DNA of 64,000 nucleotides, taken from Octopus bimaculoides (taxonomy: Eukaryota). Positions 2,982 through 64,000 of this stretch are shown here, one piece after another. The stretch's first letter is position 1, and the number at the start of each line of letters is the position of its first letter. Both the position numbers and the translations under genes were made by a program. Location of the stretch: positions 18,078,942 through 18,142,941 of the forward strand of contig NC_068996.1 of NCBI RefSeq assembly GCF_001194135.2. The letters run 5' to 3'. The notes beneath the pieces were generated by a model. That model was not told the DNA's origin, made no database searches, and was given only the letters and a program-made list of their open reading frames with translations.

Positions 2982-3038
<57 letters not shown>

Positions 3039-3084
3039 AACACACACAAATATATATATGTGTGTGTGTATATATATATATATA

Positions 3085-3234: not shown

Positions 3235-3251
3235 CAGAGAGTATATATATA

Positions 3252-7725: not shown

Positions 7726-7784
<59 letters not shown>

Positions 7785-7952
7785 TACATACACGATGGGC
7801 TTCTTTCAGTTTTTGTGTACCAAATCCACTCACTAGGCTTTGGTCGGCTCAAGGCTATAGTAGAAGATACTTGCCCAATGTGTCACGCAGTGGGACTGAA
7901 CCCAGAACCATGTGGTTGGTAAGCTACTTACCACACAGCCACTTCTACGCCT
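7532..7952 (-). mobile_element. tRNA/CORE-like SINE family C with internal microsatellite
   Basis: Reverse complement aligns end to end with 36983-37365. Confidence 0.85.
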
Positions 7953-15712: not shown

Positions 15713-16140
15713 TGATATATAGATAGGTGAGATCATATGAAATAAAGAAAAAGGGGTGGCATTAGAATAGGGAGTTAGTGCTAAAACAAATGTATGTTTA
15801 TGTAAGTACTACATAGGGACTTATATAAAGCTTACTGGTGCCATGACTATTGAAATCAATACACATGGTTCAGATTCTCAAAATGTAATGAACAGTAATA
15901 GGAAATTTTTAATGATACTTGGTCAATTTTTCTGAAAGTGATTAAGATTGATTTGGGTTATAAATTCAAACATTCATTAATTTCTTGGATTTTTGAATAC
16001 TTAAAATATCCATATTGATGTAATAATATATTTGAATAAATTAAAGGGGTTTATTTTTTACATTAATTTAAATAAATGAATCTAAATTTGTTTTCTGTCC
16101 TTGTTTCTGTTTTGCTAATGGATTTATATTTTTGTTTCAG

Positions 16141-16934
16141 AAATGTTTTCTCCTGTTTCAATACAAAGATCACCACAACCCCAAACTCCACTCCAAGCAG
16201 CTGCAGCAGCAACAGTTGTAGTTACACAGCCCAGTACACTTGCTAGTCATTCAACTTTGTCAATACAGGATGCAAATGCAATCCAGCAGGTGCTTTCAAT
16301 TGCATCTTCAGCTGCTCGTTTACAAACACAAGCACAACCAAATATGTCTGGAACTATTCATCACCATGGGCAGCAATGTCAGTTGAGTGTATCTGGGAGT
16401 GGTTTATCACCACTTTCTGTTAATGTAGCTAACCATCAACAACCTCAGCCTGTGTTTGGAATGAGTTTACCAACTCATCGATTCACTCAAAGGCTGCCAT
16501 GTGGCACAAGTTCGGGAGCAAATGTCGCTGTAACAACAACAGATGCTAGTGTAACCTCAATTACTTGCTCATCTCTAGACTCTTCACAAGTGCTCACTTC
16601 AAGTGCTGGCAACTTCTCACTTAGTACGTCGGCATCAACATCTACAACAGTTGCGCCACCTAGAAAACGGATTAAACTAGAAGAGAAACCTCCTAGTACA
16701 CCGGAAATAGCTGCATATAGGAAAAAAATTATAGACTTTAAACTTAAAGAAATGGCTGAATTAAAAGAAAACTATTCTGAACATTGGACAGAATGTTATT
16801 TTTTAAATGGTAGTGGGAATATTATGGATTTCCTCCATTGGAAGAAACGTCCTCCATTACAACTTGTTCAGTTTTTAAAAGCAAAATCTTTGGACAGTGA
16901 TGATGAAGATGAAACATTGGAGTTGGATTCCTCA
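16141..16934 (+). CDS. dom: dom exon 2: Q/S/T-rich N-terminus plus EP400_N-like block
   Basis: TTTCAG|AA acceptor (phase 1). ORF 16143 frame, includes PPRKRIKL (NLS-like) and YRKKIIDFKLKEMAELKENYSEHWTECYFLNGSGNIMDFLHWKKRP. Donor TCA|GTAAGA, phase 0. Confidence 0.9.
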
Positions 16935-18009
16935 GTAAGATATGACACTTCTTTCATTTCTAGAAAAATACACCAAATATTTGCAAATAGTTTTACTTTA
17001 ATATATGACTATTATATTGTTTTAAACATTTAACCCATAAGAATTTAAAATGGCCATTTCAGCCTCTGTCTTTTTATGTTAAAACTGGCCAGAGTTAGCC
17101 TCTTACACCTACCCTACAATGTCATTCTAAAAATAAATAACCATATCAAAATCTCATTGCTTCAAGATTATATATGGTTCATTCAAATCAACGTAAATAA
17201 GTTTTACATTTGACAGAGTAATCTTAACACTAAAGAGTCCATACATTTTATCCTAGTTATACAAAGATAAAACATATTTCCCGTTATTTCATTTAGTGTG
17301 CCCAAACTGGGCACACAGCTCTTGTTTCACGTTTGCATTTTATCTGTCTTACTTAGTAATATTATAATTGGTTTGGGATATCTGAACATTACCTGGTAAG
17401 ATCATCATAAATTTTACGTAACTCCTGAAGAGTTTTATATTATTAATCAGAGAAATGTTTTATACCAGAAATTTTAGACCAAAATGTCATTGGGTTTCCA
17501 TAATCTGCTTCTTAGATTATAACTTTGCTAAATACTATGTAAGTAACAGTGTAAATATGAACTTTCATGATTAGTCTAGGACTAATCATGAATGTATGAT
17601 AGCACAAGAAACTGGCTTACTATTTTTCCCAGGTTGATCTAACACTTTTAGATGTATCTGATAAGTTAGATTTGTTACTTAACATTATATCAATGAAAAT
17701 CTCAGTTTAATTTGCCAGGTTCAAAATACAGAATTGTCTTACCAAGTATTAGATAATTAATCAGATATATCATCATTAAATGATGGTGGTGACACTAATG
17801 ACTATTGTTGGATTTACTTCATTTTATTTAGTGTTTAACATGTAAAAGAAAGCGATAGTGGTGGACTTCATAATTTCCTAAACCCAGATTTTTTTTTGTT
17901 TATGATGCAAACACAGCCATTACCACAAAAGTGTTATTTCTGTGAGATAGCATACTCTTCACAAATTTCAACTCTAAGGCACAGTTCACTAGCTAATCGA
18001 GCACCCCCC

Positions 18010-24665: not shown

Positions 24666-24774
24666 GTAAGATACAATTTTTATTAATACAATTTACATTT
24701 TTCACTTTGAATTTTAAATAGTTTCCTGTAATATACACCATGCTTAATTTTGGGTTTTATGTTGTTTCATTTAG

Positions 24775-25099
24775 TGGGACCCAATCAATGGTGCGGACAC
24801 CGAAGTCTCCAACGTCTCCAGCACATCGTTTGAATACTCGACAGCAAGCTATTTCAGCAGTATATGACAGTGCTATTGGTTCACAAGAAGCTATTGTTGA
24901 GAGGGCCAAACAAGAAGCTCAAGTGATGCACAGGGTAGCTGAACTCAGGAAAGATGGTCTTTGGTCAGCACGGCGCCTGCCTAAAGTACAGGAACCAATC
25001 AGGAATAAAGCCCATTGGGATTACCTACTGGAAGAAATGCAGTGGCTAGCAGCTGATTTTGCTCAGGAAAGAAAGTGGAAAAAGGCTGCAGCTAGAAAG
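24775..25099 (+). CDS. dom: dom exon 5, HSA domain start
   Basis: AIVERAKQEAQVMHRVAELRKDGLWSARRLPKVQEPIRNKAHWDYLLEEMQWLAADFAQERKWKKAAARK is the SWR1/p400 HSA signature. TTAG| acceptor; AAG|GTGAAT donor. Confidence 0.95.
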
Positions 25100-26140
25100 G
25101 TGAATTTAAAATGGAAGTGTATTAGTAAAATGCATGTGTGCGTTTTCAATCCCACTAAGTGGTATCTTGCGAAAAGGGTTTTCTACTGTATCTTTGGGTT
25201 GAGCTTTGCTTTCCGAGTAAATTGGAATAGGTGGAACCCCCTTATATGGTGGGTTGGTTGAATGGCAGAAATTTTCTTTGCATTTTAGTTATATTCTGAG
25301 ATGAAATTTCATGTTGAGCAACTTTGCCTTTAAATGGCGATACGTGTGTATATACAGGTGTGGTTGAACATTTAATGTCTGTTTGCTGTCAATGAGTTCC
25401 TGGATTCAGTTCTATTGTAGGGACTGTACCTGTAGAAAAAGAAAGGCCAACTTTTCCACATAAAATGCAGCATTTAATTCACCTGAAGATTATGTTGCAA
25501 AAGCTTTTAAGAACACTCAGCTACTTACATTAAAATGCTGTAAGATTATAAATTCTTTTGAATAAACAGGAGTATTCATTGTTGAAAACATACATGTGCA
25601 CGTGTATACATTGACGATTGAAGTAAGTTTTCTGTTGAGCTCTAAGCACTGAAGTATTAGTATTCTAATAAATAATTGGTTAAATAACCTGATTGGTTTC
25701 GAATAGGATATGTTATGATTATCAAATACCAAACGCTTTGACATTTCTTTTTACCTCACAATTTTGATGCCAACTGGAATCAATATCAGTTCTCCAGTTT
25801 TGTGATAACCAACTTTCCATTTTAAAAGTGACCTAAATTTTAAAGCCTTCCATCAAACATTCATGTTAATTGTTCTAAACACTAGATTAATTAATGACAA
25901 AGTTATTTTAATAATTTCTTCAGTGTTCTTCAAATTGAAAGGAAGCCACTGTATTTCAGCAGAAATATGGTAACAAAAGAGTTAACATATTTGAATCTGG
26001 AGAGGAATACACATGGTCTTAGCTAATCTGAAAGTTTGATATTAGTAATTTGTTTGTTTCTAAAGTGCTGAAACTGTAAATTTATTTGATACTGATTAGA
26101 ACATTGTATTTTACTAGAGGTTTTGAAATTTATTTTTTAG

Positions 26141-26281
26141 CTATCCCGTATGGTTGCTAAATATCACCAAGAACAAGATCAAAAAGAACAGAAAGCTGTG
26201 AAAGAGGAAGCCCAGAAATTGAAAAGAATAGCCGGTCAAGTGGCAAAACAAGTGAAAGAATTTTGGGCTAACATCGAAAAG
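26141..26281 (+). CDS. dom: dom exon 6, HSA helix
   Basis: LSRMVAKYHQEQDQKEQKAVKEEAQKLKRIAGQVAKQVKEFWANIEK; phase 0-0. Confidence 0.93.
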
Positions 26282-26434
26282 GTTTATACAATCAAATATT
26301 TGTTGCATTCTTTTAGTTCATTTTTTCCTGTTATACCATATTTTTTACCAGCTTTCTAGGGTTGAGCAATTTATCCTGTAAATTGTCAAAAAAACAACCA
26401 AACAATTTATAGTTTTCCAGGCATTTATATTTAA

Positions 26435-26651
26435 CCCTTTAGCATTTAAACCAGTTGTATCTTGCCAAAATATTCAACCTGTTTTGTATTCAGACCAGCC
26501 AGACCTGGTCTTTCACACATACTCTACGTCAATCTGAAACTGAACAATCACATAATTGAAATCTTAAAGTTATGAGATAATGCATAATTAATTCAAAACA
26601 GTGTGGCTAAATAAGCTTTACACTTGATAGAATAGTCTGAATGCTAAAGGG
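26435..26651 (+). mobile_element. piggyBac-like MITE
   Basis: TTAA|CCCTTTAG...CTAAAGGG|TTAA; homologous to 7299-7519. Confidence 0.8.
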
Positions 26652-27186
26652 TTAAATGTCTGTATCTGCTTTTAGTTTGGTAAATTTTCTAAGTTAATGC
26701 TTTCTTAGCAAATTAACAAGAACAAAATACCAATCAATGTAATCTGAATTAATAAATTAATAAATCTTTGCAATATTAGTTATATTGTGGTATGTACTTT
26801 AGATGGTACATATTGACACTGTATGTCTGAGAAGACAGCAACTACATATCAACACACACTTAAAGCCTTCTAGTCTGATGTTCCCCTTAATACTTTTTTA
26901 CCTGTTGATTTATAGTTGACTGTTTAATGTAGTCAGTATGAAACTGAAGTTTATAATTTTATACCAGTGAACACTTAACTTTTGCTATTAGTGTTTTGAG
27001 TGCTCACATTTAAAAGAAAAAATATACTCGTTGAATTTTAAACTTACTTTGCATTCTATTAAGATGGATTTATGCATGAATTAGCAAATTAACATTTTGT
27101 TGGCTATACATATATTTATACATATATATGTAACCTTATGAAGACTAAATAATCTGCTTGCTGGTAAGTATTCCAGTTGGATATAA

Positions 27187-28090
27187 AATTAAGGGATTGC
27201 TTAAATGGAATCACTTCTAAATTAACTGTCTTCCCCCCCCCCCTTTTTTTTGTAAAGTTCAAGTGTAATTGTTCTTCATCTTATGTGGTACCAATAAAAC
27301 ACTTAGTAATATTTAAAGGTAAGGAATTAACCAAATTGTGAGAGCATTAGACAACTACATTGCTGTCTTTGTTATGACTTTATATGTTCGGAGTTCAAAT
27401 CCTGGCAAAGTTAAAATCATATCTTGATCATTCTTTCTGATTGAAGAAGACTATTTTAAGAATCTTCTGGATGTTGAATGAAGTTGCTTGTTGGCATATA
27501 AAAACATTTTTTCCTTCCAATTTTGCATCAAAACTGTGAACACAATTCATTTAATCAATTTTCAGGTTGTTCAGTACAAGCAGCAAACTAGGCTTGAAGA
27601 GAAAAGACGAAAAGCTTTAGATATACACCTGAATTTCATAGTTGACCAAACAGAAAAATATTCTTCATGGTTAACAGAAAGTCTAGCTAAATCTGATATG
27701 GGAAAAGGTGTTTCATCTTCTGTTGTTGGGTCCATAACAAGTACTCCCGAACATTCCAACGCCAGTGGAGATGGTAATGCACAAATTTTCTCACGAAATT
27801 TCTTAATTTTAGAGATATAATTTTGTTTCCCTGTTTTATTATGGTTATTTATTTAATAATCATTATTTAAAGTAATTAAGGAGTTGCTTAAATGGAATTG
27901 CTTCTAAATTGTCTTCCTCCACTTTTTTTTTTAAAAGTTCAAATCTCATTGTTGCTTTTCATCTCATGTGGTACAAGTAAAACACTTAGTAGTAATATTT
28001 AAAGGTAATGAATTAACCAAATTGTGAGAGCGTTAGACAAGTACATTGTCTTTGTTACGGCTTTATATGTTCAGAGTTCAAATCCTGCCA
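27187..28090 (+). repeat. Local direct repeat of about 220 bp (27187-27407 and 27874-28090) flanking exon 7
   Basis: Shared TTGCTTAAATGGAAT...AAAACACTTAGTA...TAATATTTAAAGGTAA...AACCAAATTGTGAGAGC...GAGTTCAAATCCTG. Confidence 0.85.
27566..27773 (+). CDS. dom: dom exon 7, post-HSA
   Basis: VVQYKQQTRLEEKRRKALDIHLNFIVDQTEKYSSWL...; TTTCAG| acceptor, G|GTAATG donor, phase 0-1. Confidence 0.93.
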
Positions 28091-34823: not shown

Positions 34824-36176
34824 ATTATGATCATTGTTTTTAAATCTGCTTTTTGTAAGGGTTAGACAAAACTTATTTAGATAGTATACTTACTTAGGCA
34901 GTGTTGTATGACCCCCATTGTCGCTAAAGCTTATTTCTCAAGTGAAGTATTGTTATTCCACTGGTCTTCACACAAAACTGCTGAGCTAGTGGCATATAGT
35001 TAAGGGAAGACCTACCTTGTTATGTTTCTCTCACCACCTGGCACAAAGCTTCTTCCCTCAATACTACTCTCACCCTGCAGTTGGGGAGTCTTGTCCTGCA
35101 AGTTACTTGCTGTCCTAACTGGTGCTGGTAGTATAAAAAAATGTACCCTGTACACTGTAAAGTTGTTGGCATTAGGAAGAGTATACAGCCATAGAATTCA
35201 TGCTAAAGTAGACACTTAAACTCGGAGTAGTTGTTTGGCTTGCCACCCCCTGTCAAACTATGTAATCTTTGCAACTATGGAAGGAGGGTTTTACATATAT
35301 CATTGTTTTGATGTTCACTTTTTCATGTCAACTAGTATTTGGGTGTGTACATGTTCATATTTGCAAGTATTGGCTGTATAGGTGAGAAGTCTGTTGTAAC
35401 CATGTAGTTGACTGTTCAGTCCTGCTCTGTGATGCCTTGGGCAGATGCTGCCATGTAGCAAGCTGAAATCCAAAACCACACCAGTGCCCTGTGGGATAAA
35501 AATATAGTTTTGGGTTGAAGACAGGTGGATGGGGATCTAAGCAAAGAATATGGCTTCATTAAGTTTTGGCACAACTGATGCCAGCATGGGAAAGGCTGTC
35601 TTTGAAAAACAGCATTGAGATGGACATATGAGCATATGCATGTACACATATGTGTCTACTTTAGTTTTGGATTGGTACATCATACATTTTAACTACCTAT
35701 TTTATGTGTTAAAAGGCAACTAATAGAGTTAGCAACAAAAAGAACAACCAGTTGTAAAACACTGTCCTGAGTAATCAAAGAAATATGTCTGTGCATATAT
35801 GTGTGCATGTGCACATATACATGCAATGTAAGTTGATGGCTTGTATTCTGTGTTTTTATAGCATCCCCCCTCCCTGCTTCATTCTTGTAACTAATGTACT
35901 TACATGATATTAGCAACTTAATTTTAGATTAATTCCACACGCTATTACCACAATCTGTAAATTGCAATAATTTCAAAGCAGAAATCATATAAAATTTTTT
36001 TAATAGTAAGTTTCTTTTGTGTCAGTCTTGCTTATTATTTTTTTTTGTATTTGTTTAGCAGTACTTTTTTTTTTTTAAATTGTTCTTTTAAACAGTTTTT
36101 TTAATTGTAATGTATAATTTACTCATTTTTTGTATGGTGGTAATTTAGTATTTTAATTATATAATATTTAATTCAG

Positions 36177-36354
36177 GTGAAAGTAGCCGTCCCTTTCTTG
36201 TTGAAGCATACTTTACGTGAATATCAGCACGTTGGTCTAGATTGGTTGGCCACGATGCATGAAAAGAAACTCAATGGAATTTTAGCCGATGAAATGGGTT
36301 TGGGTAAAACTATTCAAACTATTGCCTTGTTGGCTCATTTAGCTTGTGAAAAGG
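36177..36354 (+). CDS. dom: dom exon 14, Snf2 ATPase motif I (Walker A)
   Basis: [12 protein letters not shown]...[17 protein letters not shown]; phase 0-1. Confidence 0.97.
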
Positions 36355-36473
36355 GTAATTATTTTAATATCCATTTGAAATTACGTAATCTAATTTATTA
36401 TTTGAAATTAAAAGCTTTTGAAATGCACTTAGTTGTTTGAGCTGATTCTTGTTATTTGTTACTGTTCTATTAG

Positions 36474-36610
36474 GTATTTGGGGTCCGCATTTAATTGTGG
36501 TACCAACTAGTGTAATGCTCAATTGGGAAATGGAGTTAAAGAAATGGTGTCCTGCCTTCAAAATCTTGACATATTATGGTAACCCAAAAGAAAGGAAAGC
36601 TAAGAGAACA
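36474..36610 (+). CDS. dom: dom exon 15, ATPase motif Ia
   Basis: GIWGPHLIVVPTSVMLNWEMELKKWCPAFKILTYYGNPKERKAKRT; phase 1-0. Not in ORF track. Confidence 0.97.
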
Positions 36611-36711
36611 GTGAGTTAAACAATCTATTGAATATTTCATTCTTTATATACATTTTAACAATTTATTTGAACAAGATCTTGCAATTTTCAAAAATGTCAC
36701 TTTTTTTTTAG

Positions 36712-36822
36712 GGTTGGACCAAAACAAATGCGTTCCATGTTTGTATTACGTCCTATAAACTAGTTATTCAAGACCATCAAGCCTTTAGGAGGAAAAAATG
36801 GAAGTATTTCATTTTAGATGAA
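36712..36822 (+). CDS. dom: dom exon 16, up to Walker B (ILDE)
   Basis: GWTKTNAFHVCITSYKLVIQDHQAFRRKKWKYFILDE|GTAAGT. Not in ORF track. Confidence 0.97.
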
Positions 36823-36858
36823 GTAAGTATTGATTTGCAGTTATTTTGATTTATTTAA

Positions 36859-37429
36859 CCCTCTAGTATTTAATCCAGTAATATTTAGCCTTAATATGTT
36901 AAAACTGACCAAATCCAACCTCTTGCACCTTCTATTCAATATCATTCTGAAAATATGCAAACACATCATAGAAATCTTGCATAGGCGTAGGAGTGGCTGT
37001 GTGGTAAGTAGCTTGCTTACCAACCACATGGTCACGGGTTCAGTCCCACTGCGTGGCATCTTGGGCAAGTGTCTTCTACTATAGCCTCGGGCCGACCAAA
37101 GCCTTGTGAGTGGATTTGGTAGACGGAAACTGAAAGAAGCCTGTCGTATATATGTATATATATATATATGTATGTGTTTGTCCCCCCAACATCGCTTGAC
37201 AACCGATGCTGGTGTGATTATGTCCCCGTAACTTAGCGGTTCGGCAAAAGAGACCGATAGAATAAGTACTAGGCTTCCAAAGAATAAGTCCTGGGGTCGA
37301 TTTGCTTGACTAAAGGCGGTGCTCCAGCATGGCCACAGTCGAAAGACTGAAACGAGTAAAAGAGATTAATTCAAACCCTTTGTATTACATAAGTAATATA
37401 TTTGACAAAGAAATCTGAAAGCTAAAGGG
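36859..37429 (+). mobile_element. piggyBac-like MITE interrupted by SINE C
   Basis: TTAA|CCCTCTAG at 36855-36866 and CTAAAGGG|TTAA at 37422-37433, with the SINE between. Confidence 0.7.
36983..37365 (+). mobile_element. tRNA/CORE-like SINE family C, full length
   Basis: Head GGAGTGGCTGTGTGGTAAG, B-box GGGTTCAGTCCC, TTGGGCAAGTGTCTTCTACTATAGCC core, internal (TA)n, tail GAATAAGTCCTGGGGTCGATTTG...CCAGCATGGCC. Confidence 0.85.
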
Positions 37430-37691
37430 TTAATATTGCAAGTGGGTTGTTGAATCATAAGTTAAAGAAGCTGTGTATACCAGTCTCAAAGAAGTGTTCA
37501 TTTATTGTTCTAAAATTTTAATTTTTTAGGACACAGAATTGTCTGAAATCATAAACTTGTAATTAAGATAAAGGCAGTTATGAGTTGTATAGTTACTAAA
37601 CTGCTATAGTGCTGAATATTTTTTTTTTTTCTCCCTTAAATAATTGCTTGATTGCTACTAAATGAAATCCACTGTTTCTCTGAATTTTCAG

Positions 37692-37943
37692 GCTCAAAAT
37701 ATAAAAAATTTCAAGTCTCAACGTTGGCAGACACTTTTAAATTTTCAAAGTCAACGCCGATTATTATTAACTGGAACTCCGCTTCAAAACAGTTTAATGG
37801 AACTTTGGTCATTGATGCACTTTTTGATGCCAAATGTGTTTTCTTCGCATAAGGACTTCAAAGAATGGTTTGCTAATCCATTGTCAGGTATGATAGAGGG
37901 AAGCCATGAATACAATGACAATCTCATCAAACGTTTGCATAAA
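37692..37943 (+). CDS. dom: dom exon 17, motif III
   Basis: AQNIKNFKSQRWQTLLNFQSQRRLLLTGTPLQNSLMELWSLMHFLMP...; phase 0-0. Confidence 0.97.
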
Positions 37944-38765
37944 GTGAGTATGATTTATATATATATATCTTATTTCAGTGTTTTGTTTTGTTTTGTTTTT
38001 TTAATTCAGTTGCTCTGGACTGTATTGCTGGCATTCACAGAAACATATTGGCATAAAAATAATAAAGCAAATGTGTTTTCAGTTAGAAAAATACAAGTAT
38101 GGGGTATTTTCTCTGTGCTGCACTCAAAACTTGCTTCTTTTGCCTTAGTCTCAATTTATCCAATACTTACCTTGTCAGTAGAATTTAATAGACAAAACAA
38201 GACAAACCTGTCGTGCGTGTGTGTTAAAGTATATGCCAGACTGTTAAAGGTTCTTTACAGATGGAGTCAAAATACTGTTGTTCAGTTTTATAGTTGACTG
38301 AGTTTGAAGTTTCACTGCTGCTGATTTATATGAAAATTTATTAGGACTTGGTTTTATTATACAGTAATTAAGGTGAGAAACAGTAGTTTGATTGGGAAAG
38401 CCTGGATATTTGAACCCACGTGGTGGGAGGAGTCTTTGAAAAGTGAAGGCAGTACGTTCAGATTATTACAGAATTAGAAGGCATCAGTGTGGGGAGTTAT
38501 TCATATAGAAATATTTCTTAAAATATGCTTTATGGTAGCTATTTGAAACAAAACCAAAGAGACAAAAGACGAAATCAGCAGCATATACAAGAAATAAAAG
38601 ACACATAGTTTGCAGATGAAGCAGTTCAAAGTAATGAATTGTTATAAGTTTGACTTACTACTGGAAATGAAACTTATTTTAATTGAATTTTTGTTTTATA
38701 TTTTTTCAGTCTCAGAGCACTAGATTCATTCGTTTATGAGAAATCTACTTTTTCTTTTAATGCAG

Positions 38766-38902
38766 GTCTTGCGTCCATTTTTGTTGCGGCGCCTCAAAGA
38801 CGATGTTGAGAAACAAATGCCTAAGAAGTATGAACATGTTGTTATGTGTCGCCTTTCGAAAAGACAGAGATTTCTCTATGATGAATTCATGTCTCAAACA
38901 AA
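38766..38902 (+). CDS. dom: dom exon 18
   Basis: [45 protein letters not shown]; phase 0-2. Not in ORF track. Confidence 0.97.
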
Positions 38903-40059
38903 GTAAGTTAATGTAATTTTACAGACATTCCACTCACCCTATGAGATTTTACAAGCCTACAAATTTTGCCATTGCATGGAATTCTGTAACCCAAAACCTA
39001 TTTTCCCTTTGATTTTGATGTTGTAAATTGAAATGCATTCCATTGTGAATTGAAGTGGAGAGAAATGAGGAAATAACCTGTTTATTCATGTGTATGACAG
39101 TTTATAAACACATGGTGTGTATGTATATATTAAAAAAAAAATGTTTAGGAAGGAATGTAGCTGCTTGTGCATTTGTCCTAATTTTGCTTTTTAACGTCTG
39201 ATAGTGTTCTCACTGTGGTTGTAGCAAGCTTTAAATGTGTTTTGTAATGTAGCTGAATTTTTCTCCTCATCAGACCTTCGTAAAACACTGTTTAATATCC
39301 ATTGAATCCTTATATGATTACTGGCAGCACTACTGCTTTCACTTCTACTTAGTGGCCTCTTATGAGTTACATTGAATAAAGGTAATAATATACTATGTAG
39401 TCAGTTTTAAAATCCAAGTGTAGCAATGATAGACTAGAAATCATGCTATTAGAATCAGAAAAGTAGTAATGTTCTGTTTGAGTGTGAATTAATGATCTTA
39501 TTATTGCTTGCAAGAAGAGATATGGAAAAAGGAACAAAATTTAAAGAATTCAGTTGATAGGTTTTAAGCCACAAAAGAGCAGGGAGTAGAGAGGAAAAAA
39601 AAAATGAGTGACCAGATGTATGAAATTATTATGCCAAATATATCTTGTGTGTATGTGTGTATATATACACACACGTAAAAAGAGAGAGAGACTGTAATTT
39701 TACTTCTTAATATTTACCCAAGTTTCCCTTAGGATGGAATTACATGCTGTGTCATGCTTTACAGTTCCTGCTGAATTTTGTGTCCAGAGTTTCAATGACA
39801 CAGCAGGATACTATTATTTTATCTTTGTTCTTGTGAGGTTGGGTTTATGTCCATTGGGCTGTTGTGAGAGTTATGTTGTTAATTAAGTTTGAATTGTTAG
39901 AATACTTAGAACGATAATGTTACTTTGTAGACTATATACTTAGAGAACATTAATCAATAGAATATTTGCTGAGTTTGTGATTGAGAGAATGAGTAATGGT
40001 AAGAAAGAAAGGAATTTATTTTGCTTTTATTTTAATCCAAAATTTATTGCTAATTTCAG

Positions 40060-40246
40060 AACCAAAGAAACATTAGCTTCTGGTCACTTCATGAGTGTCA
40101 TCAATGTGCTAATGCAGCTCAGGAAAGTATGCAATCATCCAAATCTCTTTGACCCACGGCCAATTGTCTCACCATTTCAAATGCAGGGTTTAGTATATTC
40201 AACTGCATCCCAAGTTGTCAATGCTTTAGAAACTGGACCGTTTGAT
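40060..40246 (+). CDS. dom: dom exon 19, end of lobe 1 and start of insertion
   Basis: TKETLASGHFMSVINVLMQLRKVCNHPNLFDPRPIVSPF; phase 2-0. Confidence 0.96.
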
Positions 40247-40386
40247 GTGAGTAACTTTTTTGCATTTTCATGTTTTCTAAAAGTGTGAAACTAACCTTTA
40301 TAAACTATAGCACTAAAAACTAAAAATATTTCTTCAAATTGCATTTGGTACTAAGTTTTTATTTTTTGTTTTTACTCTATTGACAG

Positions 40387-51639: not shown

Positions 51640-51842
51640 ATTTGTATTTGTCATCCCACCAGTGACTGTGCCATTTGTAAAGCTCCATGTTTCTCATCCA
51701 TCTCCATCCTCTGTAGCTCGAGAAAACTTTCAGAGGTTTATGTTACATAATTATGTCTCTCCTCAAACTGCCTGCCTCCACAAAATAGATGCTTGTATGT
51801 CAGTACAGTTTCCTGAACTCAGGTTGATACAGTATGATTGTG
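51640..51842 (+). CDS. dom: dom exon 28
   Basis: RFVFVIPPVTVP...SVQFPELRLIQYDC; long poly-T acceptor, G|GTGAGT donor; phase 2-1. Confidence 0.95.
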
Positions 51843-52055
51843 GTGAGTAACCAGCTTTCAAGCATTAAATCTTTAAATGTATTGGTGGCATGTTTTAATT
51901 AGAATTTAATTGAAAGGTACTTCAAACAAACAATAACTGTTTGTCATTTTAAAGAGTTTATTGTCCTCATTTAAGTAGTTGAAACATTTTTGCATTAAAT
52001 TCATATTTTATATGAGGTTATTTATTGGAAATTTTAATATTTTTTTTGTCAACAG

Positions 52056-52225
52056 GAAAATTGCAGACATTAGATGTCCTTCTAAGACAATTGAAAACAG
52101 GAAACCACAGAGTGTTGATTTTTACACAAATGACAAAAATGTTAGATGTACTTGAAGCTTTTTTGAATTACCATGGTCATAGATATTTGCGCTTAGATGG
52201 AACAACCAGAGTAGAGCAAAGACAG
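52056..52225 (+). CDS. dom: dom exon 29, HELICc motif IV
   Basis: GKLQTLDVLLRQLKTGNHRVLIFTQMTKMLDVLEAFLNYHGHRYLRLDGTTRVEQRQ; phase 1-0. Confidence 0.97.
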
Positions 52226-52612
52226 GTAAAATGTTGTTTTAATTAGTTGGAAACTAGTTATTTTTGTGCATCATAATACTAAATAAATCATTGGTTTTCC
52301 AAAATATTTATGGAAAATTTTACAGAAATTTTGTTTTTCTTTGTCCTAGCTATCTGAGAATGACATTGGATCTTTTTCATGTTTATAAATCTTCCATTAA
52401 TGCATGTGATGAAAATTAAACTGAAAACTGTAAATAGGAGTGAAGCAAATAACAAATGTATATAATGTTGATCAGAGAAAGTTAAACATCATCATTTGTT
52501 ACTTAACTAATGTCTTAATGGACATATGACTGGTTTACATGTGACTTGAAACACTTGGGTTTCTAGTGGAACAGTTCGTGAATTAGATTTCATTGTAATA
52601 TTTCTTTTATAG

Positions 52613-52837
<225 letters not shown>

Positions 52838-53196
52838 TAAATGAAGAAATGTATAATTTTATTATAGGTCGTATAAGGATTCAATTACATTTCTATATGG
52901 TGTGTAGGGTAAAGGGATAAATGATAAAGTTTAAATACACACAGAAATGTATATTTCCATTTAGTAAATAGCAGTTTAAAAAATAAATTTTTTATCACTA
53001 CTTAATTTCCACGTATGTTGAACACTTGATGTCAACCTGTCTGAGACTGCTTATGGTTCTTCTTGTTTTAAAGTGACCTAAACTCTTCATCAAAATTTCA
53101 TAATTTGTTCCAAATACTAGCTTGATAGTGAGAAAATTATTATACTAATTCATTCATTAGTGTATTTCTACAGAAATAAGGTGACAAAAAGTTTAA

Positions 53197-53416
53197 TCCT
53201 TTAGCATTCAGATTACTCAGTCATATGCTTGTATATTATTCACATACTTTTGAGTCAGTCATACATTATCTTACAGCTTTGAGATTTTGATGTGATTGCT
53301 TATTTTTGCAATGACATAGGTATGGCATGTATAGGAGGTCAGTTTTAGCCAATATAAACATAAAACAAGTTGAATATTTGGGCTGAATAAATATGGCCAG
53401 TTTGAAAGCTAAAGGG
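53197..53416 (-). mobile_element. piggyBac-like MITE, antisense
   Basis: TTAA|TCCTTTAG...CTAAAGGG|TTAA. Confidence 0.7.
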
Positions 53417-53969
53417 TTAAATTCCAAACCTCAGCAAATCTGCTTGTGTTGATTGCTATTCAAAGACAAGGTAGACTACATTCTATAATGAAAAGTTTTC
53501 TTGACCTTGGTTTACTTAATTTATTCATTTATTTTCAAAACATGTCCACTTTTCCACAATGGCATGTGCTGGACAAAACATATTGGAATTTTTCTATGAC
53601 TAGATGCTTTCCTATCACCAACCCTCACCTGTTTACAAGTAAGGTAATATTTCCTCTGTTGCTCCAAACAACAAATAGTTTTCAAATGTCAGTGTAGTGT
53701 CAATATAGACATTGACAGCACTTGTGTGGATGGTGACCTTGTTTTTATGCAGCATACAAACATCATAATGAGGAAAGCGCAAGTGTGCTTGCATGTATGC
53801 ACAACTGGCTTCCTATAATTTCTACCTACCAATTCACTCATAGGGCATTGGTTAGTCTAAGGCCACACTGGGTGACACCTGACTACATTGCCATACACTA
53901 AGAAGGAACCCTAAGACATGTGGTCATAAAGTGAACTTCATGAAATATGTAACTTTATCAAGAATTAAG

Positions 53970-54013
<44 letters not shown>

Positions 54014-54133
54014 CTTAATTCCTGTTGAAATCAGTTTTATTGTTTGTTAATTTTGATATAGGTGACTGCTTTATGTTTTTATTTTGTTCCTTGTAAAACT
54101 GCTGATGCTTATTCTTGTAATTATTTCTTTTAG

Positions 54134-54248
54134 GTTAATCAGTGAAAGAACTATCGAAGAAAATATTTTAAAGAAAGCTGATCAAAAGCGCCTTTTAGGA
54201 GATGTGGCCATTGAGGGTGGAAATTTCACTACTGCCTTCTTTAAGCAG
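54134..54248 (+). CDS. dom: dom exon 31
   Basis: RLISERTIEENILKKADQKRLLGDVAIEGGNFTTAFFKQ; phase 2-0. Confidence 0.96.
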
Positions 54249-54598
54249 GTAGAATTCAGTGTTATTGATCATGAAATTTACCCAGTAAACAATATATATT
54301 GTGATTTGTGTTCCTGACTATATTGTTGGCAGTATATTATCATTAATCTCAGATTAATCAGTTAAGATAACCATTATCATCCAGCCACATCTCTTACACT
54401 ACTGAAACCCCCCACATAACTGGATGCCCACATCAACTTTACTGTACCCAAAGGTTCCCAACACTATTCCTTACATTCCTAACGATATCTCCATCCAGAT
54501 ACCCCCAATATACCCTTCTCTTTGATACTATATATCCTCCATTAAGCAACTTTCTCAGTCTGTCTTTAATCAAATGTGTAAACAATTATGGTTAAACT

Positions 54599-59126: not shown

Positions 59127-59309
59127 GCATTGTGTAAAGCAGAGGATGAGACTGATGTTATGGCTGCTGATTTGGTAAAAGCTGAACAAAAAGCAGAATT
59201 AGCAGAATTTGATGAAAACATCCCTTGGGATGATAAAGAGGCTGAGAGGAAGCAAGATGAAGACGAAACATCTAAGGTTGAGATGGAATTGAGTCTTTTG
59301 GAAAAAGAG
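59127..59309 (+). CDS. dom: dom exon 33
   Basis: ALCKAEDETDVMAADLVKAEQKAELAEFDENIPWDD...LLEKE|GTAAGC. Confidence 0.94.
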
Positions 59310-61149
59310 GTAAGCGAGTTTTTAACACTTGTAAAAGTTTTTTTTTTTTTTTTTTCTTGTCTTTAAAACATATTTACAAGCATCAGTAAAACTTTGGACT
59401 TATGTGATAGTCATTTTCTTGCAAAGTTCACCTCTTGATGAGGGACTACCATTCTGTGTATTGGGAATTGCAGTTTCAGAAATGAATTTTGTGTAAGCAT
59501 ATTATTTACTGATGAACATTAAAAGTAACATTTATGAAATAATTTTGACCAACCAATGTAGGGGCCTTTATGTAGTTGGTTAACCTGCTAGAAAGGACAA
59601 TCAAATTCTAATAAAATCTTACCATTGTGCAATGATTCCCAAACATCTTGATATCAGTCCCAATTCTCCAGAAAAATTTCTTCCCTCTATTCATCACCAC
59701 CACCACCATTATCATATAATGTCCATGATCCCTACTGACACTGGTCGGATACTTTGACAGGTTCCTATACATCATGGTCTATTGTCTGTTTTGGCATGGT
59801 TTCTATGGCTGGATGCTCTTCCTAATACCAACAACTTTACAGCGTAGTGGATGCTGTTTTCTGCAACCAACACTACTGAGGTTGCTATGCAGCTTGTAAG
59901 ACTATGAATTCTGAGTGGGGAGCTTTATATTGGATGACGAAGGGTAAAAGTATGAGAAAAGAGGCCGGAGCAGAACAAGTCTCTTGTAGAGGGGCCATAT
60001 GGCTATTCATATTTTAGAAGTGAGGGTACAAGTGATTGAGTGGCTCAGGAAAACAATAAAAATAGTAGTGATGAGGTGGATAGCAGGGATAAAGGAACCA
60101 ATGGTGTGGGTGGAGGTTGTAAGAGTATTGGAGGAATAAGACATGGGGAATGGGTGAGGGGAGGTAGGTATAGTTGAAATGCAGATATGTGATTGGTAGA
60201 TAATCAACAATGCATGAGTTATGGGAGGAAAGGGAAAGTAGAAGGATGAGAGAGAGAGATGATGTGGTTGTATAAGTTGCAGGAATGGACAAGGAGGAGA
60301 GAGATGGTAGCAAGCATAGTGCATGAGAATGAGAGAGGCATAGGAGGAGAGATAATTTTGTGATTCAGTGGCACTTGGTGATGGTGAAAGTGTGAGTGAG
60401 TAGAATAGTGTTAATGGATGGAGGATGGATAACAGATGAAATGATTTTGGGTAGTAAAAAGTGGTATCATGGAAGAACTGCAGTTAGGGAGACAATGGGT
60501 GATGGTGATGTCTTGAAGAGGAAGGAAACTGAGTAAAGAACCTAGTTTTGCTAACATATATATTTATGTGTGTAGGTTTTATTTATGCACACACATACCC
60601 ACATACAGCTTTATCAGAACTCATTTTTGCTGGTGTGAGTGGCTCTTTTTGAGAACTGCTTGTATCCATATAATTCTTTCTTACACCAGTCTTGGACAAG
60701 TTTAAAAACCACCTTGGTTTTGTTAAACAGCAATTTATTTGGATCTGTTTCAATATTTGCAGCAGCACTAACCTCCCCAAACATTTCTGTACAATCTTAA
60801 AGTGAGAACCATAGAAACACCAACAGAAATTAAGATAGAATAATCAGGTTTCATTTGGTTATAAATCCTGGCACAATTTAATCCTTTAGCATCCAAATTA
60901 CATTGTTAAATGTAATGCTTAGACATGATATTTTAAGGTAGATGTGAAAGGCCGGATCTGGATGGTTTAAACATAAAAATGGGCAGAATATGAGTTTAAA
61001 TAACATTTTTTGGTAGATGCCCTTTTACCCTCATTTCCTACTATGGTAACCAAGTATCCCTTCTACAGCAAGGCACTTATCTCTATCCCTCAATTATACT
61101 TTAACCACTCAACTGGCACAAAGCCAGCTCCCTCAGTACTGCTTCCTCT

Positions 61150-61529: not shown

Positions 61530-61613
61530 CTATCTCCTGTTGAGCGGTATGCTGTCCTTTTCTTGGAAACCCAAATGGAACCATTCTGTAGTGAGGAGCT
61601 TCAGATGGCAGAA
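61530..61613 (+). CDS. dom: dom exon 34
   Basis: LSPVERYAVLFLETQMEPFCSEELQMAE|GTAAGT; phase 0-0. Confidence 0.94.
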
Positions 61614-61830: not shown

Positions 61831-61965
61831 GAGGATATTGAGAGTGCTAAAAAAGACTGGGAGTTGGCACGGCTCAAATCTCTGAAAGAAGAGGAAGAAA
61901 TAAGAGCTGAATTAGAAGAAGATGAGATGCTGTTTACATATACAAGGGATGATGCATATAATCAG
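61831..61965 (+). CDS. dom: dom exon 35, shared portion up to internal donor
   Basis: TTTGTAG| acceptor; EDIESAKKDWELARLKSLKEEEEIRAELEEDEMLFTYTRDDAYNQ, followed by CAG|GTGAAA. Confidence 0.93.
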
Positions 61966-64000
61966 GTGAAAAAATCTAAGTCTAAAAAGAATTCTGGTAA
62001 CAAAAGCAATAAGAAAAAGAGTAATTATAAGAATTTTAATAGTAGGCAAAACACTTCTGATGAAAAGCTAACTTCTAGCCGTAAGAGTTCTCGAAGATCT
62101 GCTGCTAGCTCAGACATTGCTAAATCTCGGAGCAATGGACTAAGTAGCACTAGAAAGTCACTCATTAATAATAATGAAAAAGATGAAAACAGTTCAAGTC
62201 GGGGTGGGAAAATGAAGGGCATTAATTCCGTAAGATCTGAACACTCTTCACCAGTAAGCACTGGTATGTTGAAGCATGCTCTTAAGAAGGATGTTTCAAA
62301 GATTCCATCCAATCCTAGTGCCCAAAACAAGGCTACTTCAAATCAAAAAGTGCTAAATCTTAATTCCATTTCCAGTAAGAACAGTAATTCTGTAATTAAC
62401 ACCAAAACATCTGCTTCTAGTACTGTCGGCAATCAAAAGTTGGTAGGGTCTAAAAGAGCTAAAAAAGGAGTCGGGGCTAATAAAAAGAAGGTAGGCGGTC
62501 CTGGTAGAAAACCGGTTGGTTCAGGCAAAAAAGGTGCTGGGTCTAAGAAATCTAATACCAAAAAAGCAAACTCTAACAAAGTTGCATCTACTAAGAAGTT
62601 ATCAGGTGGTGTAATATCTAAGAAATCAGCTGCTACATCAACAGTTGGTACATCCACTACTACTACTACTACTAGCAAGAAAGGGTCACAGGTAAATTCT
62701 GTTAAAAAAATTAAAGTGAATTCTAAGAAACTGCTTAGAGCTACCCTAATAGCTCAGGAGAAACTAGCTGCTGATTTACAGGTAGCAGCCACTACGACTG
62801 CTTCAACACCTGTTCCAGTTTCTTCTGCTAGGATATTAGAAACAGCCGTAAAAGTTTCAGAACATGTAAAAGTAGAGTCGAAATCAACCAGCAAACTACC
62901 AACCAATTCAACCGTAAAAGTGTTGTCAGCAGCAGCAAAAACTACTCATACTTTAACAGTTAGCACATCTACTCAAATGGCTTGTGCCTCATCTGTTAGT
63001 ACCTCTGTCACACGTGTTTTACCTGTGAGTTCTACTGGAACTTCTGTTCCACATATTGTTCCAGTCAGTGCAGCTACATGCATTGTATCTGGATCAACAG
63101 CTGCTCATGTCTGGACAACTTTAGCTCAAAAAGTACCAATTGGTCATATGGTGCCAATCAGAGCTTTAGGACAAAAAATACAGGTGCCAATGTCTGCTTT
63201 AACTCAAAAAGTACCTGTCAATACTATCACTCAAAAAGTACCTATTTCAACTATAACTCAAGTTCCTGTGTCTGCTATTACCCAAGTTCCTATTAGTAGT
63301 ATCACTCAAGTACCTGTCTCTGCTATATCTCAGAAGAAGGTACCTGTGTCAACTATAACTCATGTTCCTATGTCTGCTATTACACAGAAAATACCTGTAA
63401 CTGCTGTTACTCAAGTCCCCATTACAGCAATCACACAGAAGGTTCCTATTAAAACCTATTCTCAAAAGGTTCCTGTCACTACTATCACACAAAAGGTGCC
63501 AATTACTACAATAACACAGAAGATACCCTCTCAAAAGGTTCCCGTACCTATTGCTACACATAAGATACCTGTAACTTTTGCTACACAGAAACTTCCGGTA
63601 TCTGTCTTACAGCAGAAACTTCCGGTATCTGTCTTACAGCAGAAACTTCCAGTATCTGTCTTACAACAGAAACTTCCAGTAACTATTGCAGCACAGAAAT
63701 TACCTACAACTTCTCTTACTCCAAAGTTTATAGTTTCTACTCCAACTCAAAAACTTTTATTTTCCACTCCAACCCAAAAACTATTGGTTCCAACTCAAGC
63801 ACAAAAGCTATTAGTCACCTCATCAACTCAAAAGATTTTAGTATCGGCTCCTACGCAAAAACTATTAGTTGCAACCCCTACTCAAACGCATCTAGTTTCT
63901 ACTGCACCAAGCCAAAAATTACCCCTGATATCAACTCCTACCCAAACTGTGCCAGTGTCCACTATTCTTCCTAAGGCAGCAGTTACCACTTCAACTACAC
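61966..64000 (+). CDS. dom: In-frame read-through extension of exon 35: Lys-rich then TQKVP-repeat low-complexity C-terminus, open at window end
   Basis: Manual translation in the exon-35 frame finds no stop over 2035 nt (VKKSKSKKNSGNKSNKKKSNYKNFNSRQ...LPKAAVTTSTT). Probably omitted from the ORF track because it has no stop inside the window. Confidence 0.85.
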   Translation, partial: MKKSKSKKNSGNKSNKKKSNYKNFNSRQNTSDEKLTSSRKSSRRSAASSDIAKSRSNGLSSTRKSLINNNEKDENSSSRGGKMKGINSVRSEHSSPVSTGMLKHALKKDVSKIPSNPSAQNKATSNQKVLNLNSISSKNSNSVINTKTSASSTVGNQKLVGSKRAKKGVGANKKKVGGPGRKPVGSGKKGAGSKKSNTKKANSNKVASTKKLSGGVISKKSAATSTVGTSTTTTTTSKKGSQVNSVKKIKVNSKKLLRATLIAQEKLAADLQVAATTTASTPVPVSSARILETAVKVSEHVKVESKSTSKLPTNSTVKVLSAAAKTTHTLTVSTSTQMACASSVSTSVTRVLPVSSTGTSVPHIVPVSAATCIVSGSTAAHVWTTLAQKVPIGHMVPIRALGQKIQVPMSALTQKVPVNTITQKVPISTITQVPVSAITQVPISSITQVPVSAISQKKVPVSTITHVPMSAITQKIPVTAVTQVPITAITQKVPIKTYSQKVPVTTITQKVPITTITQKIPSQKVPVPIATHKIPVTFATQKLPVSVLQQKLPVSVLQQKLPVSVLQQKLPVTIAAQKLPTTSLTPKFIVSTPTQKLLFSTPTQKLLVPTQAQKLLVTSSTQKILVSAPTQKLLVATPTQTHLVSTAPSQKLPLISTPTQTVPVSTILPKAAVTTSTT
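63121..63960 (+). repeat. Coding tandem repeat, about 24-30-nt units ((T/S)QK(V/L)P motif), including three near-perfect 27-mers at 63586-63666
   Basis: CAGAAACTTCCGGTATCTGTCTTACAG x2 plus one variant gives QKLPVSVLQ x3; flanking units TQKVPxxxI and TQKLLVxxP. Confidence 0.92.

What the first reader, a model, noticed from the sequence alone, without database searches (positions are those of the whole stretch)
61831..64000. Splice-or-read-through switch giving two Domino C-termini (p400/NuA4-like versus SWR1-like) from one gene
Seen: the conserved block ends TYTRDDAYNQ exactly at CAG|GTGAAA (phase 0). Composition then changes abruptly, yet the frame stays open for at least 678 more codons, which is implausible for an AT-rich intron. 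Established: Drosophila domino makes DOM-A (SANT-containing, Tip60/NuA4 complex) and DOM-B (SWR1-like, H2A.V loading) by alternative 3' splicing; vertebrates use EP400 and SRCAP. From memory, EP400 continues past a similar TYTREDAY block into a conserved PPTPP region and SANT domain, which the read-through lacks. Inference: use of the donor yields a p400-like isoform via exons beyond the window; read-through yields an SRCAP/DOM-B-like isoform with a lineage-specific tail. This would extend the isoform-defined-complex mechanism to a lophotrochozoan. The ORF track misses it entirely.
Basis: partly seen in the sequence, partly recalled or inferred. Interest (0 to 1): 0.8.

Follow-up and report, generated by a model that had tools for sequence, protein, structure and literature searches.

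The report
Domino gene's two alternative tails
The last visible exon of a Domino-type chromatin-remodeller gene ends in a splice donor that can also be read through into a long coding tail, the same two-ending design known from the fruit-fly domino gene, and I found the same layout in snails, a sea slug and a tick.

Summary
Exon 61831-61965 ends ...LFTYTRDDAYNQ at CAG|GTGAAA in phase 0. The frame then stays open for 678 codons to the window end; the other five frames hold 23-91 stops.

- Ten related loci carry the same CAG|GTG donor. They include Candidula unifasciata, Plakobranchus ocellatus and the tick Amblyomma americanum.
- Nine of them read through for 588-1805 codons. The three tails tested are under protein-level selection, and many share a WSNPNLVIRTR motif and AT-hooks.
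- Wherever enough downstream DNA is held (eight loci), exons for IWSPPTPPQDD, a SANT domain and Q-rich sequence follow. They align to human EP400 2159-2527 (E=4e-93).
- RNA contigs of one relative splice exactly at this donor into those exons. Public gene models exist for both forms in gastropods.

The ATPase is SRCAP-like and the N-terminus is EP400_N, so this is an undivided Domino gene. The tail shows no sequence similarity to human SRCAP.

This is a new member of a known kind. DOM-A/DOM-B is established in Drosophila and has been noted across arthropods.

The parts
16119..17030 (+). N-terminal exon region of the same gene, with an EP400_N domain
   Evidence: Pfam PF15790 EP400_N, E=5.1e-25. 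tblastn with the full-length model P0111 aligns 16341-16922.
24773..27697 (+). HSA-region exons (24773-25102, 26141-26284, 27563-27697)
   Evidence: tblastn with P0111 residues 423-621 at 64-76% identity, including [24 protein letters not shown] and LNFIVDQTEKY. Pfam HSA was not recovered from the single exon scanned.
36174..40267 (+). ATPase lobe 1 exons (36174-36356, 36473-36607, 36712-36822, 37689-37946, and further exons up to 40267)
   Evidence: Pfam SNF2-rel_dom, E=5e-15 and 2.4e-21. Best solved-structure match is human SRCAP at 155 bits, against 46.5 bits for EP400. Exon map.
51650..54281 (+). ATPase lobe 2 / Helicase_C exons (51650-51847, 52055-52225, 52616-52816, 54129-54281)
   Evidence: tblastn with the relative's transcript L005 at 86-97% identity in the core and with P0111.
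59127..59315 (+). Conserved post-ATPase exon (ALCKAEDETDV...AELAEFDENIPWD...)
   Evidence: tblastn.
61530..61613 (+). Exon LSPVERYAVLFLETQMEPFCSEELQMAE, ending in donor GAA|GTAAGT
   Evidence: Aligns to EP400 LTPIEKYALNYLE....
61831..61965 (+). Last exon common to both forms: EDIESAKKDW...LFTYTRDDAYNQ
   Evidence: Acceptor ttttgtag| at 61831. 82% identical to the relative's transcript. A profile of this block hits human EP400 2159-2230 at E=9e-8 and no SRCAP chain.
61966..61974 (+). Dual-use 5' splice site GTGAAAAAA; it also encodes V-K-K, the first tail residues
   Evidence: CAG|GTG is identical in all 10 related loci read. Plakobranchus has CAG|GTGAAAAAG. Use of the donor is shown in a relative. 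All 96 library hits that align to the last block column have Val (GTN) there.
61966..63999 (+). Read-through (DOM-B-type) tail. 678 codons, basic and rich in S, T, K, V and P. It has an AT-hook-like PGRKP at about residue 180 and 9-residue tandem repeats from about 63200. It is still open at the window end.
   Evidence: Only the first ~100 residues align with relatives' tails. No WSNPNLVIRTR motif lies within the window.

Best explanation
The window holds almost a whole Domino-type (SWR1-class) remodeller gene: EP400_N, HSA, a split SRCAP-like ATPase, and the conserved TYTRDDAY block. I propose that its last visible exon is a composite terminal exon.

If the weak phase-0 donor CAG|GTGAAA at 61965/61966 is ignored, translation continues into a long, disordered, basic tail. 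The mRNA would then end at a poly(A) site inside what is otherwise an intron. This gives a DOM-B-type protein, presumably the H2A.Z-exchanging SWR1-like form.

If the donor is used, the whole tail is removed as an intron. The exon joins, in phase 0, to exons beyond the window. These encode (optionally a 12-residue micro-exon, then) [I/M]W[S/A/C]PPTPPQDD, a SANT domain and Q-rich sequence. This gives a DOM-A/EP400-type protein, presumably the scaffold of a TIP60/NuA4-like acetyltransferase complex. The outcome would be set by competition between splicing at this donor and cleavage/polyadenylation after the tail.

Shown: the ORF, the donor and the domain content in the window; the full architecture in eight other loci; use of the donor in one relative's RNA; protein-level selection on the three relatives' tails tested.

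Inferred: the downstream exons in this genome, use of both routes in this species, and the complexes and activities of the two proteins.
For: ORF and donor in the window.

Gene identity.

Same donor plus a long read-through ORF in L001, L002, L003, L007/L008, L009, L010 (Amblyomma americanum), L011 (Plakobranchus ocellatus) and L012 (Candidula unifasciata). Taxa.

Downstream PPTPP and SANT exons on the same strand, 1.4-8.5 kb after the tail stop, each preceded by AG in phase 0. They match human EP400 2159-2527 at E=4e-93.

Tail under purifying selection: amino-acid identity 48-55%, pS 0.76-0.84, pN 0.32-0.38. Conserved motifs are present in 133 library clusters at E<=1e-3; 31 carry WSNPNLVIRTR and 32 have tails of at least 300 residues.

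Donor use: the spliced RNA contigs L004/L005 and the genomic contig L006 are 137/138 identical up to CAG and diverge at GT. The RNA continues with VFLSDIDQEKMP-MW-PPTPP and SANT. The in-frame equivalent is P0053.

One transcript joins an SRCAP-like motor (357 bits to SRCAP against 197 to EP400) to the EP400-type C-terminus.

In Candidula, the deposited DOM-A-type model skips a 591-codon ORF containing PWSNPNLVIRTRK. In Plakobranchus, the deposited model reads through.

Literature: DOM-A and DOM-B share 2008 residues and define NuA4-like and SWR1-like complexes (PMC7239659).
Against: The window ends at 64000. The tail's stop, its poly(A) site and any PPTPP or SANT exon of this genome are therefore unseen, and none lies elsewhere in the window.

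No RNA or protein data for this species were found. No close relative of this particular tail is in the libraries.

Beyond about 100 residues the window tail is not alignable to other tails, and it lacks the WSNPNLVIRTR motif in the 678 residues seen. That motif does lie 600-900 residues into some other tails.

Direct RNA evidence exists only for the spliced route, in one relative. The read-through route rests on conservation and on deposited gene models.

Contigs L004/L005 carry a 1-nt frame break right after the junction. I attribute it to a homopolymer indel for two reasons: L004 and L005 differ by one A in a homopolymer, and P0053 is in frame.

The functions of the two proteins are extrapolated from Drosophila.
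Confidence: 0.8

Rival explanations
1. In this lineage the read-through tail is the only C-terminus. The GTG after AYNQ is just a valine codon, and a TIP60-scaffold function, if present, is encoded by a separate EP400-like gene or has been lost.
For: No PPTPP or SANT exon can be seen in the window. The window tail has diverged strongly. No transcript data exist for this species.
Against: All eight related loci with enough downstream DNA have the DOM-A exons directly behind the tail. CAG|GTG is invariant in 10 loci, although synonymous sites between the three loci tested are saturated. The N-terminus is EP400_N and the block is EP400-like, as expected of an undivided gene.
Confidence: 0.12
2. 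61966-63999 is only an intron (or a retained intron that is never translated), and its open frame is incidental, for example a by-product of in-frame tandem repeats.
For: The distal third of the tail is made of 24/27/54-nt tandem repeats, which could keep a frame open. No Pfam or solved-structure hit.
Against: There are 0 stops in 678 codons against a shuffle mean of 42 and minimum of 25. The non-repetitive proximal 1200 nt is equally open, and codon periodicity is strong. The start of the tail (VKKSKSKK...SSRRS) is homologous to tails under clear purifying selection in other species. Read-through ORFs of 588-1805 codons recur at the same site in nine other loci.
Confidence: 0.03
3. The tail and the PPTPP/SANT exons belong to two neighbouring genes: an SRCAP-like gene followed by an EP400-like gene.
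For: The deposited tick annotation calls them as two genes.
Against: Only 1.4-8.5 kb separates the tail stop from the PPTPP exon. No HSA or ATPase exons lie between them in any locus. RNA contigs and the Candidula model join the SRCAP-like ATPase directly to PPTPP and SANT.
Confidence: 0.03

Closest known systems
Drosophila melanogaster domino (DOM-A / DOM-B isoforms)
   Same: One SWR1-class gene gives two proteins with a common HSA-ATPase body and alternative C-termini. One carries SANT plus Q-rich sequence and the other an unstructured tail. In flies they define NuA4/TIP60-like and SWR1-like complexes (PMC7239659). The fly DOM-A-specific antibody peptide KEHKRSRTD (bioRxiv 052746) lies in the exon homologous to the PPTPP exon, so the split point appears to be the same.
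   Different: The window's tail is unrelated in sequence beyond its first residues and is rich in lineage-specific 9-residue repeats. Isoform expression and complexes are untested here.
Human EP400 (p400), scaffold of the TIP60 complex
   Same: The block LSPVERYA...TYTRDDAY and, in relatives, the downstream PPTPP, SANT and NNRPxRTSQ exons align to EP400 2159-2527 (E=4e-93). The window's N-terminal exon is Pfam EP400_N.
   Different: The window's ATPase is far closer to SRCAP (155 against 46.5 bits). EP400 has no read-through tail. Library ORFs of the type TYTREDAYNM|VG... stop within 8-100 residues; they look EP400-like to me, but their taxa are unknown.
Human SRCAP
   Same: It is the best match for both ATPase lobes. 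From my own knowledge, SRCAP also has a long, disordered, basic C-terminal tail with AT-hooks. Clear AT-hooks (GRGRPRK) occur in many relatives' tails, and a weak PGRKP occurs in the window.
   Different: No sequence similarity was detected between SRCAP and the block, the tails or the WSNPNLVIRTR profile, even at E<=10.
Composite terminal exons / intronic polyadenylation (for example the immunoglobulin mu secreted versus membrane switch)
   Same: A 5' splice site inside an extendable exon competes with a downstream poly(A) site. This gives either a short-gene mRNA with the exon extension or a long mRNA with the distal exons. This comparison rests on general knowledge.
   Different: Here the extension encodes hundreds of residues. 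Regulation is unknown. AATAAA or ATTAAA hexamers occur 10-1240 nt after the tail stops in relatives, but none has been validated.

Membership tests
SWR1-class remodeller (Swr1 / SRCAP / EP400 / Domino) | SNF2 ATPase split by a long insertion, most similar to SRCAP/Swr1 | tested here: met
   Pfam SNF2-rel_dom on exons at 36.2 and 37.7 kb. Lobe 2 lies at 52.0-54.3 kb. The top solved-structure match is SRCAP.
SWR1-class remodeller (Swr1 / SRCAP / EP400 / Domino) | HSA domain N-terminal to the ATPase | tested here: inconclusive
   tblastn aligns 24773-27697 to the HSA region of the full-length model P0111 at 64-76% identity. The one exon given to Pfam gave no HSA hit.
Domino-type gene with DOM-A/DOM-B alternative C-termini | Tail-encoding sequence contiguous with the last common exon, behind a phase-0 donor | tested here: met
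   in the window. The same holds in 10 related loci.
Domino-type gene with DOM-A/DOM-B alternative C-termini | Downstream exons for a SANT domain and Q-rich region in the same transcription unit | not testable with these tools
   They would lie beyond 64000, and none is in the window. They are present in L001, L002, L003, L007/8, L009, L010 and L012.
Domino-type gene with DOM-A/DOM-B alternative C-termini | Both mRNA forms are made | not testable with these tools
   No RNA for this species was available. In relatives, the spliced junction is seen in RNA contigs L004/L005. Deposited gene models exist for each form in two gastropods.
Domino-type gene with DOM-A/DOM-B alternative C-termini | The isoforms nucleate distinct complexes (TIP60/NuA4-like against SWR1-like) | not testable with these tools
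   Known only for Drosophila (PMC7239659).
Conserved read-through tail family seen here's searches | WSNPNLVIRTR(R/K) motif and the NTVPILEKMAMQL block in the tail | tested here: not met
   Both are absent from the 678 tail residues in the window. In some relatives the motif lies 600-900 residues into the tail, so it may lie beyond the window.
Vertebrate SRCAP C-terminal region | Sequence similarity of the tail to SRCAP; AT-hooks | tested here: not met
   No SRCAP hit at E<=10 for the tail, the block or the motif profile. The window has only a weak AT-hook-like PGRKP.
Vertebrate EP400 orthologue proper | EP400-type (divergent) ATPase together with the SANT C-terminus | tested here: not met
   The ATPase scores 155 bits to SRCAP and 46.5 bits to EP400. 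The gene combines features that are divided between the two vertebrate paralogues.

The most novel reading that the evidence does not exclude
The two-ending design is not a fly or arthropod invention that converged on the vertebrate SRCAP/EP400 split. It is a single ancient feature, at least as old as the protostome ancestor. The design consists of one phase-0 GT donor after the TYTRDDAY block, a read-through tail with AT-hooks and a WSNPNLVIRTR motif, and then PPTPP, SANT and Q-rich exons. If so, vertebrate SRCAP and EP400 could be the two isoforms made permanent after gene duplication. The invariant valine after the block would then be a footprint of a codon that doubles as a splice donor. 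WSNPNLVIRTR would be an undescribed short linear motif specific to the SWR1-type isoform.
Probability: 0.45. Interest if true: 0.6.

Novelty: new member of a known kind. Interest (0 to 1): 0.45.

Why it matters
Domino isoforms are the textbook example of one gene specifying two chromatin machines, one for H2A.Z exchange and one for H4 acetylation. The eLife paper that showed this called the fly solution convergent with the vertebrate gene duplication, and suspected it might be arthropod-wide.

Here the same exon, the same donor nucleotides and a shared tail motif appear in gastropod molluscs and a tick, and the same exon and donor in this window. That points to common descent of the switch in protostomes. 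It also gives a concrete model for how SRCAP and EP400 may have arisen.

In practice, genome annotations currently record only one of the two forms, or split the locus into two genes (Candidula, Plakobranchus, Amblyomma). Orthology tables and isoform-aware expression analyses for this gene are therefore likely wrong in many invertebrates.

The conserved WSNPNLVIRTR motif is a testable candidate for an isoform-specific interaction site.

Tried and rejected
1. The window tail and the relatives' tails were searched against solved structures and Pfam. Nothing was found. The block profile and the WSNPNLVIRTR profile do not reach human SRCAP. The tick tail reaches neither SRCAP nor EP400. I therefore dropped the idea that the tail can be called SRCAP-homologous by sequence.

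2. I looked for a close relative of this window's tail, to find its stop and its downstream exons. None is in either protein library.

3. I looked for PPTPP or SANT exons elsewhere in the window. Only noise appeared at E>1.

4. I considered that the 1-nt frame break after the splice junction in L004/L005 might mark a poison exon. I rejected this in favour of a homopolymer indel: L004 and L005 themselves differ by one A in an A-run, and the related protein P0053 is in frame.

5. The 36-nt micro-exon (MFVSDVDGAEMP in Candidula; VFLSDIDQEKMP in L004) was sought in L001-L003 and L007-L010 with pattern searches. It was not found. Whether those species splice AYNQ directly to IWSPPTPP is unresolved.

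6. Taxa of the metagenome- or Logan-derived loci (L001-L009) could not be established from accession searches. Look-ups for P0053 and P0095 found no record. The window's own taxon was not verified.

7. The fly gene structure (read-through or separate exon for DOM-B) could not be checked in the papers read.
Full report
**Observation**

An acceptor (ttttgtag|) opens an exon at 61831 that encodes EDIESAKKDWELARLKSLKEEEEIRAELEEDEMLFTYTRDDAYNQ. The exon ends at 61965 and is followed by GTGAAAAAATCT, that is CAG|GTGAAA in phase 0. The frame then runs on for 678 codons to the last base of the window.

This is not chance.
- The tail has no stop in frame, while the other five frames have 23-91.
- In 2000 shuffles the mean was 42 stops and never fewer than 25.
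- Nearby introns carry 0.054-0.079 stops per codon.
- Base composition is strongly 3-periodic.
- It is by far the longest open stretch in the window.

G+C rises only modestly, from about 0.29 to 0.36-0.42. The distal third of the tail is built of 24-, 27- and 54-nt tandem repeats, all multiples of three. They encode units such as QQKLPVSVL.

**What gene this is**

A full-length relative (P0111) and a relative's transcript map along the + strand from 16 kb to 62 kb.
- The N-terminal exon hits Pfam EP400_N (E=5e-25).
- HSA-region exons lie at 24.8-27.7 kb.
- ATPase lobe 1 lies at 36.2-40.3 kb (Pfam SNF2-rel_dom).
- Lobe 2 lies at 52.0-54.3 kb.
- Three conserved post-ATPase exons follow, ending at 61965.

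The motor is SRCAP-like: 155 bits to human SRCAP against 46.5 to EP400. The terminal block is EP400-like: a profile hits EP400 2159-2230 at E=9e-8 and does not hit SRCAP even at E<=10. The gene therefore combines features that vertebrates divide between two paralogues. That is the definition of a Domino-type gene.

**Related loci**

A search with the read-through translation found three long ORFs from other genomes. They run straight through ...AYNQVKKKSKK... for 763-901 more codons and end in a shared ...LDTG.

Their contigs (L001-L003) show three things on one strand:
- the same donor, CAG|GTGAAGAAAA;
- the long ORF;
- 2.9-4.7 kb after its stop, an exon that begins directly behind an AG, in phase 0, with IWSPPTPPQDDNDVYIDQ. 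This is followed by exons for a SANT domain, an NNRPMRTSQ...LAESGI block and Q-rich sequence.

Joined to the window's block, these exons align to human EP400 2159-2527 at E=4e-93.

Further look-ups added more loci:
- L007/L008: a 588-codon tail, with the PPTPP exon 5 kb on.
- L009: an 1805-codon tail with AT-hooks, with the PPTPP exon 1.4 kb on.
- L010, the tick Amblyomma americanum: a 708-codon tail, with PPTPP and SANT exons 7 kb on that are annotated as a separate gene.
- L011, the sea slug Plakobranchus ocellatus: the deposited model reads through CAG|GTGAAAAAG for 710 codons.
- L012, the land snail Candidula unifasciata.

In Candidula the deposited model is of the spliced kind. It skips, as an intron, a 591-codon ORF that contains PWSNPNLVIRTRK. 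It then uses a 36-nt micro-exon (MFVSDVDGAEMP, cag|...|gtaagt), the PPTPP exon and the SANT exons.

**The tail is a protein**

The three first-found tails are 48-55% identical in amino acids. Their synonymous sites are saturated (pS 0.76-0.84) while pN is 0.32-0.38.

A profile search of 1.84 billion representatives found 133 clusters at E<=1e-3.
- Forty-seven were scored by a simple pattern as block, then V[K/R/P], then tail.
- Thirty-two of those tails are at least 300 residues long.
- Thirty-one clusters carry an invariant NPNLVIRTR core (WSNPNLVIRTR[R/K]).
- Nineteen carry AT-hook-like GRGRP or RGRPRK.
- Fourteen carry PILEKMA.

The motif was not found in the literature library or in solved structures.

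In all 96 hits that align to the final block column, the next residue is valine, that is GTN. The profile was built with V in that column, so this count leans that way. However, CAG|GTG is also identical in all ten loci read at the DNA level. This holds although synonymous sites between the three loci tested are saturated. I read it as a codon constrained by its second role as a splice donor.

**The donor is used**

Two RNA-derived contigs from one organism (L004, L005) carry the fully spliced sequence. It runs from Helicase_C through the block and then continues GTCTTCC..., encoding VFLSDIDQEKMP-MW-PPTPP, SANT and Q-rich sequence. A genomic contig of the same organism (L006) is 137/138 identical up to CAG. 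It then continues GTGAAGAAAAAG.

The two diverge exactly at CAG|GT. A 1-nt frame break follows a few codons later. I attribute it to a homopolymer error for two reasons: L004 and L005 themselves differ by one A in an A-run, and the related protein P0053 reads ...AFNQVFKSDVDQEKMTMWTPPTPP in frame.

The same RNA joins an SRCAP-like lobe 2 (357 bits to SRCAP against 197 to EP400) to the EP400-type C-terminus. The two parts therefore belong to one gene.

**Mechanism**

The best reading is a composite terminal exon. Reading through the weak donor gives a DOM-B-type protein with a long, basic, disordered tail. The donor matches the consensus at positions -3 to +4 but has A rather than G at +5. Splicing at the donor removes the tail and adds the PPTPP, SANT and Q-rich C-terminus, giving a DOM-A/EP400-type protein.

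In Drosophila the two isoforms share 2008 residues and nucleate SWR1-like and NuA4/TIP60-like complexes (PMC7239659). The fly DOM-A-specific peptide KEHKRSRTD lies in the PPTPP-exon homologue, so the split point appears to be the same.

For this window, the ORF, the donor and the gene identity are shown. The downstream exons, the use of both routes and the functions are inferred.

**Limits**

The window ends before the tail's stop. No PPTPP or SANT exon lies in the window. No RNA and no close relative of this tail were available.

The window tail aligns with others only over its first ~100 residues. It lacks WSNPNLVIRTR in what is visible. I did not verify the window's taxon.

'SRCAP-like' is justified for the motor and for the character of the tail (position, basic and disordered composition, AT-hooks in relatives). 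It is not justified by tail sequence.

**Novelty**

The mechanism is known from flies. Scacchetti et al. 2020 already listed bee, wasp, ant, beetle and spider genes with alternative C-termini, and proposed that the mode is widespread in Arthropoda. Gastropod gene models of each form are in GenBank, though each species shows only one form. The window is therefore a new member of a known kind.

Three things seem not to have been described:
- the switch sits at one homologous donor in molluscs and chelicerates;
- the tail family has a conserved motif;
- this argues for common descent rather than convergence.

That wider reading is given as the novel case.

Noticed in passing
Library proteins P0001-P0003, P0025-P0045, P0111, P0122; L011 and L012 tails: The otherwise fast-evolving read-through tails share an invariant NPNLVIRTR core (WSNPNLVIRTR[R/K]). 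Many also share NTVPILEKMAMQL and AT-hooks (GRGRPRK). No paper in the library and no solved structure contains the motif.
   Followed up: partly
L012 41299-41334 (Candidula unifasciata); L004 about 1106-1141: A 36-nt micro-exon (MFVSDVDGAEMP / VFLSDIDQEKMP) sits between the AYNQ/DESQ donor and the PPTPP exon. It corresponds to EP400 ...YVYEDVDGQTEVMP. Pattern searches did not find it in L001-L003 or L007-L010.
   Followed up: partly
L010 (Amblyomma americanum GCA_030143305.2), L011 (Plakobranchus ocellatus), L012 (Candidula unifasciata): Public annotations record only one of the two forms per species. In the tick, the locus is split into two genes (the tail model, and a separate model starting near the PPTPP exon).
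   Followed up: yes
L006 750-890: In this relative the read-through frame has a single TAG after 37 tail codons (...KQFIDD*). The same frame then reopens for more than 219 codons that include an AT-hook (KKGRGRPS). The related library protein P0034 reads ...FIDDEYVPSSG... without a stop. This suggests a polymorphism, a sequencing error or a recent nonsense change.
   Followed up: partly
window 49732-50214 (- strand): A 161-codon ORF with a PHD finger (Pfam PF00628, E=2.5e-6) lies on the opposite strand, inside an intron of the Domino gene. It may be transposon-derived.
   Followed up: partly
window 55344-56852 (- strand), flanking the N run at about 55.7-56.1 kb: ORFs on the opposite strand lie in a patch that is richer in G+C (0.42-0.46) and strongly skewed, inside an intron. 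To me they resemble non-LTR retrotransposon protein, but Pfam gave no hit for the three pieces tested.
   Followed up: partly
window 60000-60500: About 500 nt are almost free of C on the + strand (GC skew up to +0.77), inside the intron before the LSPVERYA exon. Its nature is unknown.
   Followed up: no
window 2826-3723 and 7584-8155: (TA)n/(TATG)n-type microsatellites, and an assembly gap (N run at about 3.25-3.6 kb), lie upstream of the gene.
   Followed up: no
Library proteins P0101, P0108, P0134, P0136, P0141, P0142, P0146, P0149, P0152, P0153: In a group of short ORFs, the block ends ...TYTREDAYNM and is followed by V-G and a stop within 8-100 residues. This looks like an EP400-type gene that keeps the same phase-0 GT donor but has no coding read-through. 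The taxa are unknown.
   Followed up: no
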